Source: Saccostrea cucullata (taxonomy: Eukaryota). From it: a stretch of 64,000 nucleotides of DNA. The stretch spans positions 558,001 through 622,000 of the forward strand of contig NW_026935443.1 in the NCBI RefSeq assembly GCF_032062105.1, in the 5' to 3' direction. The translations under genes were made by a program, and so were the position numbers. Shown one piece after another: positions 6,501 to 9,500 of this stretch (position 1 is its first letter; each line of letters begins with the position of its first letter). The notes beneath the pieces are model-generated. The model was given only the letters and a program-made list of their open reading frames with translations, searched no databases and was not told where the DNA came from.

Positions 6501-9500
6501 AAAATTGAAATAATTCATAAAAATAAAATGAAAAGAAAATAACCAAATTGATTTTATTTGTATGTTGCAAATATCTCAGGTACATGTATATATAACACCT
6601 GCATTTCATGACTTTTAATTAAAAGTGCTTGACGTGTCATATACCACATTATTTCAGATTAGTACTTCAGCATTGACTAATTAGTGCCTTATTCATGATA
6701 AGAGGTTTGTGCTGACTCTGAGTCAAATCTTTAAATAGCAGCAGTTCATTTTGCAACAGGGAGATAACTCATATTGGCCTCTGGAGATATACACATGTAT
6801 GAGTCAGTGTCACTTCCTTATATACAAGCCAAAAAATAAAAAAATAAATGGCTTACAGGTTATAACCGAATGTCTGGAAGGCAGTGTGAAGTTCCCTAGC
6901 ATCAATGTTTCCTGATCTATCTGTATCAAACCTGTAAACATGTAAAGCACAGTGTAAATTAAATTTCCTTTGCAACTGTTGACATGTACAACACAATGCC
7001 ATATTCTGTTACATTTTCTGTGCATGTAAGCAAAAAAATTATCATGACACATATTCTTATGGCTTAATTTCATTTTTCAAAAGAAAACATGTTAATCTTT
7101 CATTATAATGAGGCAAATTTTGTATTTAAAAAAAATGAAACCAAATCTCAATGAAGATATACATGTAGTAGTCTATGGAAAAGTGATTGTGAACTGCAAT
7201 TTGAATCACTAATAGTTCATTAAGTTTTGTTAACCTCTCAAAGCATGCTTTCCAATCTTGGATATATTTCCATAATGCTGCAAATTCCTGGGCATCAATT
7301 GTTCCATTCCTAAAATGAACAATTTTAAAAAGTGTTACATAAAATATTTAACATAAAGAGTGAAAAAATAAATGCAATTTAACATTCTTATTTCCTAAAA
7401 ACATTTACAATGTACATGTATATTTTTCAGTAAATTACTGTTATTTTCTAATGAACAAGAGGCCTATGTGCCACATCGCTCACCTGAGTAACTTTGGTGA
7501 TGCAGTTCTTTACCAGATTTCCCCTCTACTTACATTAATCCCAACCCCCATCTTTATTTTAATAAAGCTACACTACCCCAGGATGCTTCCACCCAAGTTT
7601 TATTTCCTGGCCCACTGTGCTTGAGAAGAAGATTTTTCCAATATATTTCTATATAAAACTATGACTCCCTAATGTGGCCAATTCCCCTGGGTCATGATTT
7701 TAACAAGAAATCTACACTAACCAAGGATGCTTCCACATAAGTTTCAGCTTTCCTGGCCCAGTGGTTCTTGAGAAGAAGATTTTTAAAGATTTGTTCTATA
7801 TATTTCTATGTAAAATTTGGGTTCATACTGTACCCTACCCCTGGGGGTCATGATTTTAACAATCCTAAATATATACACTACAGGATGCTTCCACATAAGT
7901 TTCAGCTTTCCTGGCCCAGTTTGATTATTTTTAAAGATTTGTTCTATATATTTCTATGTAAAACTTGAATTTATATTGGGGTCATGAATTTAACAATTTA
8001 ATAACTACACTACCCAAAGAAAAAAGTTTATTGGCCCATAAGACACATGCATATAACAAAATAAAATTCTTTAAAATGCAGCTCATATTGCTTTAAACTT
8101 TAATAATCTGAACAGTAATAAATTAAATGCAAAGAAAAAAAACATGAATCAGAGAACATGTATCAAAGTGAGCAATCTATAATACAAAGTACAACATGGC
8201 TCACCCAAATTGGGAACACTGTATAAATTAATTTCATGATTATTTATAACTAGAGCATAAATATTTCAGATTACTTTTAAGGAATGTGCTCATTTGTAAT
8301 GTGATAATATTAGTTCAAAAACAACAAGAGAATTTGAAACAAATAACAGAAAGAACACCATCATCACATGCATACCTCTCAAATCTTAAACTTCTAAATA
8401 AGCAACAGCTCTTAATCTATATACACTTTGAATTGACTGCATACATATGCACCACCTAAGACTTATTGAACATTTTGAATGCCATGTCTGAATCTATGAT
8501 TTTTCAAAATGTAGTTAAAAGTATTCATGCAATATCTAATTAACTGATGTTCTATCCACGCTCTTTGTGACTGATATGAATAATGAATTATCGACAACCT
8601 CATACAAAACAGAAGTTTTGGGTTCTATCGGTACTTCATTTCCAAACAAAATGATTGATTCCTGAAAATCTATTTTAATAAGTAAACATAGATTTTCAAT
8701 GATTGGCTTTCGCATTTTAATATAAATTTTTTCATGAAAAAGAAATTATTTGGGAATAATCATGGGCACATCTAAGGGTTCACAAGAAATTTGTTAACTC
8801 ACTTGTTTCGATCAAACATGCCAATCATGAGCCTACAGGTCTCAGGGTTGAATGGAGACCAATTGCCATTCATTAGAGCAAACTGGAGCTCTTGTGCACT
8901 AATTTGACCAGACCTATCTTGATCTACGGCCTACAAATAACAACAACATTGTCATGCTCATTATCACAAACTCACTTGTTATGATCAAACATGCCGATCA
9001 TTAGACGACATGTTTCATGGTTAAAAGGGGACCAGTTTCCATTCAATAGTGCTTGTCGAAGCTCCACAGCAGTTATCTTTCCTGATCTGTCCTGGTCTAC
9101 TGCCTAAAATCACAATTGTTCATACAATATATTCGCATTTTAATATAAATTTTTGGCAAAAAAGAAATTACAGAAAATCATGGGACATCTAGGTTTATGG
9201 GGAAATTTGTTACTCACTTTCTGGAGAAACATGGGAAAATGAGTCTACAGGCAGGGTTGGGAACCAATTGCAATTCATTAGGCAAGCCCTGCTTGGGGGC
9301 CAATTGAATTTCAGCATTTTTATGACCAATTAAAGCACATAAAGTACAAATAAAACATATTTGTCATGCTCAAAATTCACTTTAAATTTACAGTTTTTAT
9401 GAAGGAAAAAAATATTTGAGGCTATTTTTTATGTAAGGGAAATATTTTACTCATCAAAAGGGAAAAATTAGATCTTCAGGGAAAATTTTCTCTACTGCCT

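What the first reader, a model, noticed from the sequence alone, without database searches (positions are those of the whole stretch)
8803..9103. Sterically enforced mutually exclusive EF-hand exons in a peflin-like gene (45-nt spacer)
Seen: two homologous 128-nt exons, both phase 0 to 2 with intact AG/GTGAGT sites, separated by only 45 nt (8931-8975). They differ at 8 of 42 residues (EF1 loop [12 protein letters not shown] vs [12 protein letters not shown]; RQAL vs QFAL; FNHET vs FNPET; DHNK vs DRNK) but at 21 synonymous codons, which points to an old duplication with both copies under purifying selection. Including both or neither shifts the frame. Known: very short 5' splice site-to-branch-point distances enforce mutual exclusion (alpha-tropomyosin model). 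I know of no mutually exclusive EF1 exons in vertebrate PEF1 or PDCD6. Inference: a splicing switch that tunes Ca2+ affinity or partner binding of the peflin/ALG-2 adaptor.
Basis: partly seen in the sequence, partly recalled or inferred. Interest (0 to 1): 0.8.

Follow-up and report, generated by a model that had tools for sequence, protein, structure and literature searches.

The report
Either-or calcium-hand exons in oysters
An oyster gene for a calcium-sensing adaptor protein carries two old copies of one exon, packed too tightly to be joined, so each mRNA uses one or the other; mussels have a similar pair packed even tighter and in the opposite order, which makes this a new example of a known splicing trick.

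Summary
Confirmed. The window matches the rock oyster Saccostrea cucullata; the gene is a peflin-like group I penta-EF-hand protein. Exons A (9103-8976) and B (8930-8803) are 128 nt each and 45 nt apart. Public RNA contigs show exon2-A-exon4 (Saccostrea) and exon2-B-exon4 (Magallana gigas). RefSeq already lists both forms as X1/X2 in six oysters and several Mytilus species; I found no paper on them. Each exon is under purifying selection (dN/dS 0.04-0.14). Oyster spacers are 45-52 nt, so steric exclusion backed by frameshift decay is the best mechanism (inferred, not measured). Mussels have a 20-22 nt spacer, the reverse order of exon types, and a branch-point consensus (CTAAC) in the last codons of the upstream exon. 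Scallop and ark clam have one copy. The side-chain Ca2+ ligands of EF1 do not differ, so altered partner binding near ALG-2 Pocket 3 is likelier than a Ca2+ switch. An apparent decayed third copy upstream is a MITE/gene mosaic, probably an assembly artefact. The scan had not noted this on other DNA.

The parts
10656..10691 (-). Coding part of exon 1 (start codon at 10691)
   Evidence: RNA contig L054 aligns from 10781 to 10655; donor GTAAGT
10086..10397 (-). Exon 2, Gly/Pro/Tyr/Gln-rich N-terminal tail up to the first helix of EF1
9187..9534 (-). Copy of a ~363-nt MITE, here an interleaved mosaic with the A-spacer-B sequence; probable consensus artefact of a heterozygous insertion, not a third exon copy
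   Evidence: 40 other scored copies, 16-bp terminal inverted repeats, 5-bp target duplications; the family consensus resembles the gene no more than shuffles do
8976..9103 (-). Exon 3A (EF1 loop, helix F, EF1-EF2 linker, start of EF2); probable major form
   Evidence: 42/42 aa to XP_062581058.1; spliced in RNA contig L054, SRR26159586
8931..8975 (-). 45-nt spacer: donor of A, candidate branch A at 8952 (24th base of the spacer, 22 nt from its 3' end), U/G tract, acceptor of B; in-frame TGA at its start
   Evidence: 52 nt in M. gigas, 51 nt in O. edulis
8803..8930 (-). Exon 3B; probable minor form
   Evidence: 42/42 aa to XP_062581060.1 and to M. gigas X2; spliced in M. gigas RNA contig L017, ERR10659114
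8762..8780 (-). Conserved intron block (TAGATGTG core) downstream of B, predicted to pair with the end of exon B and enclose its donor site
   Evidence: same helix in the predicted fold of three oysters, z = -2.2, +1.4, -1.8; weak
7235..7309 (-). Exon 4 (EF2)
6857..6931 (-). Exon 5 (EF3)
6311..6479 (-). Exon 6 (EF4 and EF5)
3389..3549 (-). Last exon with stop codon and start of the 3' UTR

Best explanation
A and B are an old tandem duplicate of the EF1 exon, used one at a time. SHOWN: each is spliced alone between exons 2 and 4 in public RNA contigs, and both are conserved under purifying selection across Ostreidae. INFERRED: the spacer is too short for U1 at A's donor and U2 at B's branch point to assemble together (about 24 nt apart here), so A cannot be joined to B; leak products (both, neither, or spacer retained) carry premature stops and should be degraded. 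In mussels the spacer is 20-22 nt and the best branch-point match for the downstream exon lies in the last codons of the upstream exon, next to its donor site, so the two signals would compete directly. INFERRED, weaker: A is the default form, B a minor or regulated form; both bind Ca2+ at EF1 and differ mainly on the helix F / EF1-EF2 linker surface next to the ALG-2 Pocket 3 site, changing which partners are bound.
For: Spliced contigs L054 (A) and L017 (B). RefSeq X1/X2 pairs differing in this exon in S. cucullata, S. echinata, M. gigas, C. angulata, C. virginica, O. edulis and several Mytilus species. dN/dS 0.04-0.08 for A and 0.05-0.14 for B; A vs B synonymous sites saturated (pS 0.93). 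Spacers of 45, 51 and 52 nt while the neighbouring introns here are 982 and 1493 nt. Mussel spacers of 20, 20 and 22 nt. CACTAAC/TACTAAC 24-26 nt from the acceptor in L011, L014, L015, and CACTAAC at the same exon end in a more distant mytilid transcript (L055) that I named as a test beforehand; absent from all other exon copies examined. Steric threshold ~50 nt: PMC7969005, PMC5740500. Residue mapping to ALG-2 with offset +33 and Pocket 3 residues from PMC4346919: position 20 = S53, 24 = W57, 17 = Q50.
Against: No B-containing RNA contig from Saccostrea itself was seen, only its RefSeq model. Introns of 50-60 nt are spliced in some invertebrates (58 nt in L013) and the oyster minimum was not measured, so 51-52 nt is not safely below it. 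The candidate branch motif in the oyster spacers is only loosely conserved. The mussel codons carrying CTAAC are not more conserved than other codons of that exon (18 of 34 identical). The A-over-B ratio rests on contig counts, which drop rare variants.
Confidence: 0.75

Rival explanations
1. The exons are mutually exclusive in mature mRNA mainly through nonsense-mediated decay and regulatory factors or RNA structure; the oyster spacer can be spliced and its shortness is incidental.
For: 128 nt is not a multiple of 3, so all wrong products have stops. 51-52 nt is near the minimum intron size of several invertebrates. A conserved intron block can fold over B's donor.
Against: The spacer stays at 20-52 nt in every species examined while the flanking introns are long and variable. 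20-22 nt is below the ~30-nt floor for non-parasitic animals (PMC13644364).
Confidence: 0.15
2. The isoforms are a Ca2+-affinity switch at EF1, as with the alpha-actinin or OGDH exon pairs.
For: Three of eight changes are in the EF1 loop (positions 7, 9, 11), and position 9 (T/S) differs the same way in most oyster and all mussel pairs.
Against: Loop positions 1, 3, 5 (apart from flanking variants), 6 and 12 are invariant. O. edulis B keeps T at position 9. Both T and S are common there in single-exon relatives (77 and 25 of 109).
Confidence: 0.25
3. B is a nearly redundant spare exon kept by weak selection, with no distinct function.
For: B appears in few RNA contigs: 1 M. gigas contig against well over 100 for A-type proteins.
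Against: B is identical at 42/42 residues between Saccostrea and Magallana with dS 0.39, and keeps its own signature (Q16 plus a bulky hydrophobic residue at 17), seen in only 2 of 109 other relatives. In one mytilid both forms are repeatedly assembled.
Confidence: 0.07
4. The pair is an assembly artefact (collapsed alleles or paralogues).
For: The 400 nt just upstream of A look like a consensus chimera.
Against: The same pair is in independent M. gigas and O. edulis assemblies and both exons occur in spliced RNA.
Confidence: 0.01

Closest known systems
Sterically enforced mutually exclusive exons of vertebrates (alpha-tropomyosin 2/3, alpha-actinin EF-hand exons, OGDH 4a/4b; PMC7969005, PMC9177970)
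   Same: Duplicated exons in a Ca2+-related protein, with the donor and the next branch point closer than ~50 nt.
   Different: There the intron is longer and the branch point sits far from the acceptor; here the whole spacer is short. The Ca2+ ligands do not differ between the copies.
C. elegans exon pairs with unspliceable spacers (egl-15 5B/5A 14 nt, let-2 9/10 30 nt, bet-2, gly-5, gly-6; PMC4165533)
   Same: Exon pairs separated by a spacer below the minimum intron size, like the 20-22 nt of mussels.
   Different: Those exons are all multiples of 3 nt; these are 3n+2, so decay is a second lock. That paper notes no strong branch consensus in C. elegans, whereas mussels show a textbook one inside the upstream exon.
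ALG-2 / PDCD6 and peflin (group I penta-EF-hand proteins)
   Same: PEF domain (E 1e-51 to ALG-2) and a long Gly/Pro-rich tail as in peflin.
   Different: The known ALG-2 splice variant is a two-residue deletion (GF122) from an alternative donor (PMC5037681), not an exon swap. This gene has its own intron positions and coexists with PDCD6 and another peflin-like gene.
RefSeq 'programmed cell death protein 6-like isoform X1/X2' of oysters and mussels
   Same: These automatic models are this very exon pair.
   Different: No mechanism, conservation or function is described; my paper searches found none.

Membership tests
Mutually exclusive duplicated exons | Adjacent homologous exons of equal length and phase with valid splice sites | tested here: met
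Mutually exclusive duplicated exons | Each exon occurs alone in mature mRNA | tested here: met
   A in L054 (Saccostrea), B in L017 (M. gigas)
Mutually exclusive duplicated exons | Joined A+B transcripts absent or rare | tested here: inconclusive
   none among contigs and models seen, but no reads could be examined and decay would hide them
Mutually exclusive duplicated exons | Both copies under purifying selection across species | tested here: met
   dN/dS 0.04-0.14
Steric-interference class | Donor-to-branch-point distance under ~50 nt | tested here: met
   the whole spacer is 45 nt (51-52 in other oysters, 20-22 in mussels)
Steric-interference class | Branch point mapped, and exclusion relieved by lengthening the spacer | not testable with these tools
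   needs lariat sequencing and minigenes
Group I penta-EF-hand proteins | ~170-aa PEF domain closest to ALG-2 | tested here: met
   ALG-2 E 1e-51, sorcin 4e-40
Peflin (PEF1) | Long Gly/Pro-rich N-terminal extension | tested here: met
   about 110 residues
Peflin (PEF1) | Orthology to vertebrate PEF1 | not tested
   no vertebrate PEF1 among the listed hits; a second peflin-like gene (L003/L004) is a rival candidate
Peflin (PEF1) | Heterodimer with ALG-2 through EF5 | not testable with these tools
   needs biochemistry
Gene-fragment capture by a transposon (considered for 9187-9534) | Other family copies carry the gene fragment | tested here: not met
   consensus vs gene score 90.5, shuffles mean 74, max 93.5; 0 shared 11-mers, against 28 for the window copy

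The most novel reading that the evidence does not exclude
One duplication in the common ancestor of oysters and mussels made two functionally distinct EF1 exons; their order was later swapped in one lineage; and mussels enforce exclusion with a branch point written into the last codons of the upstream exon, overlapping its donor site, so that protein sequence (the FDTN ending) is dictated by a splicing signal. The exonic branch point alone is likelier (about 0.6) than the order swap (about 0.5; the alternative is two independent duplications that converged).
Probability: 0.3. Interest if true: 0.7.

Novelty: new member of a known kind. Interest (0 to 1): 0.45.

Why it matters
It is a compact natural test series for the steric model of exon exclusion: the same exon pair with spacers of 20, 22, 45, 51 and 52 nt, and in mussels a candidate branch point inside coding sequence. 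It is also, to my knowledge and searches, the first exon-swap variation of EF1 in a penta-EF-hand adaptor, which could show what the EF1/Pocket 3 surface selects. The class of mechanism is long known and both isoforms are already in RefSeq, which limits the surprise.

Tried and rejected
1) Decayed tandem copy of the A-spacer-B unit at 9534-9132 (suggested, and attractive as a route to an order swap): rejected after searches showed a dispersed MITE whose window copy alone is interleaved with gene sequence. 2) Gene capture by that MITE: rejected. 3) Deciding between one duplication and two: the DNA tree is unresolved; the protein tree joins oyster B with mussel exon 1 (90/86, unstarred), but AU tests do not reject lineage-specific duplications (p 0.10 and 0.07). 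4) Long-range docking/selector pairing: nothing consistent across three oysters; only a local hairpin with mixed z-scores. 6) Word search with the exon 2 frame found nothing. 7) The metagenome scan gave no further intact pair in the 17 best loci examined; L023 has a broken partial copy and L010 a repeated exon 4 that lacks an acceptor. The large protein search and structure prediction were not used.

Full report
Observation. On the minus strand, exon A (9103-8976) and exon B (8930-8803) are each 128 nt, flanked by AG and GTGAGT, with 45 nt between them. Of 42 codons 13 are identical, 21 differ silently and 8 change the residue. Joining both, skipping both or keeping the spacer each gives an early stop.

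The gene. Both exons match EF1 of ALG-2, with exon position n equal to ALG-2 residue n+33. A homologue search through a full-length relative and its cluster members identified XP_062581058.1 (X1, exon A, 42/42) and XP_062581060.1 (X2, exon B, 42/42) of Saccostrea cucullata, identical to the window in exons 4-6 too. The gene runs from 10691 to about 3500. The PEF domain is closest to ALG-2 among solved structures (E 1e-51) and carries a long Gly/Pro-rich tail, so it is peflin-like. The genome also holds a PDCD6 gene and a second peflin-like gene with other intron positions. Which of the two corresponds to vertebrate PEF1 was not tested.

Both exons are used, one at a time. RNA contig L054 (SRR26159586, 96-99% identical to the window in most exons) joins exon 2 to A to exon 4. 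RNA contig L017 (M. gigas, ERR10659114) joins exon 2 to B to exon 4. RefSeq has the same X1/X2 pair in S. echinata, M. gigas, C. angulata, C. virginica and O. edulis. In M. gigas A-type proteins stand on well over a hundred public contigs and the B type on one RNA contig, which suggests A is the main form, though contigs drop rare variants.

Age and selection. The M. gigas and O. edulis genomes have A then B with spacers of 52 and 51 nt. Between species dN/dS is 0.04-0.08 for A and 0.05-0.14 for B, and synonymous sites between A and B are saturated. Scallop (Pecten) and ark clam (Tegillarca) loci have a single, A-like exon. No second intact copy was seen in the other single-exon invertebrate loci examined, several of which are short contigs.

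Mussels. Three mytilid genomic contigs (L011, L014, L015) hold two such exons only 20, 20 and 22 nt apart, and Mytilus RefSeq models use them as X1/X2. The order of types is reversed: the upstream exon has the B-like signature (S11, Q16, bulky residue 17, P29) and the downstream one is A-like. That full signature occurs in 1 of 109 other relatives. Mytilida is sister to Ostreida (PMC4936043), so one ancestral duplication with a later order swap is possible. The protein tree joins oyster B with mussel exon 1 at 90/86, but independent duplications are not rejected (AU p 0.10 and 0.07), and the DNA tree is unresolved. This stays open.

Mechanism. The steric threshold between a donor and the next branch point is about 50 nt (PMC7969005, PMC5740500). 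Here the whole spacer is 45 nt and the best branch candidate is its 24th base. In mussels the spacer is below the ~30-nt floor for ordinary animal introns (PMC13644364) and leaves no room for a branch point. The last codons of the upstream exon read CACTAAC or TACTAAC, the branch consensus, with the branch A four bases before the exon end and 24-26 nt from the next acceptor. I noted this as a prediction and then found the same CACTAAC in a more distant mytilid transcript; no other exon copy has it. This is suggestive only, since codons in that exon are generally well conserved. If right, U2 binding for the second exon and U1 binding for the first would overlap. A Mytilus coruscus model that ends right after the upstream exon (P0177) fits spacer read-through as the leak product. 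What chooses between A and B is unknown. A conserved intron block after oyster B can pair with the end of B and enclose its donor, with mixed support.

Protein consequence. EF1 loop positions 1, 3, 5, 6 and 12 are the same in A and B; the loop changes are at 7, 9 and 11, which by general EF-hand knowledge contribute a backbone or water-mediated contact or none. The other changes map to ALG-2 Q49, Q50, S53, P62 and R74; mussels also differ at W57. S53 and W57 line Pocket 3, the Sec31A-type peptide site (PMC4346919), although single mutants there had small effects in ALG-2. I therefore favour altered partner choice over a Ca2+ switch, as an inference.

A trap upstream. The 400 nt before exon A resemble a decayed copy of A-spacer-B. 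A genome search showed this stretch is a dispersed repeat with 40 other scored copies: a ~363-nt MITE with 16-bp inverted ends and 5-bp target duplications. The family consensus resembles the gene no more than shuffled sequence does, while the window copy alternates MITE blocks with gene blocks in colinear order. The simplest reading is a consensus chimera of a heterozygous insertion. It is not a third exon and gives no evidence for an order swap. The exons themselves carry no MITE blocks and are confirmed by RNA and other genomes.

Comparison and verdict. The design is known from alpha-tropomyosin, alpha-actinin and OGDH (PMC7969005, PMC9177970) and from C. elegans pairs with 14-30 nt spacers (PMC4165533). 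Paper searches found nothing on this gene's exons, and the scan had no other note on it. It is a real, conserved new member of a known kind, already present as automatic isoform models. The mussel features are the part a specialist would find new.

Noticed in passing
window 9187-9534; other copies L057-L070: A ~363-nt MITE family with 16-bp terminal inverted repeats starting CAGGG and 5-bp target site duplications, at least 40 copies; from memory this resembles hAT5-type elements (untested). The window copy is a mosaic with neighbouring gene sequence, a likely polishing artefact.
   Followed up: yes
L011:338-613, L014:665-940, L015:210-487: Mussel version of the exon pair: 20-22 nt spacer, reversed order of types, branch-point consensus within the last codons of the upstream exon.
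   Followed up: partly
L003/L004 (G000 C23519, C13582) and L005 (C21702): A second peflin-like gene, present on two near-identical contigs (probably haplotigs), and the PDCD6 gene. Three group I PEF genes coexist; both peflin-like types also seem present in cnidarian sequences.
   Followed up: partly
L010:7542-7790: In another mollusc-like contig, exon 4 and its donor are repeated in tandem (136-nt unit); the second copy lacks an acceptor, so it is a recent duplicate or an assembly error.
   Followed up: partly
L023:620-881: A broken partial copy of the EF1 exon just upstream of the intact one in an unrelated invertebrate contig, showing this exon duplicates repeatedly.
   Followed up: partly
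window 29495-30372: Two homologous OGDH segments (one reading SADLD, the other YADLD) about 780 nt apart, noted by the first stage; vertebrate OGDH 4a/4b is a published sterically enforced pair (PMC7969005).
   Followed up: partly
window 7561-8013: Tandem ~140-nt repeats of about 75% identity in the intron after exon B, probably a transposon-associated satellite common in oysters.
   Followed up: no
window 3953-4632: The small LTR element noted by the first stage lies inside the last intron of this gene.
   Followed up: no
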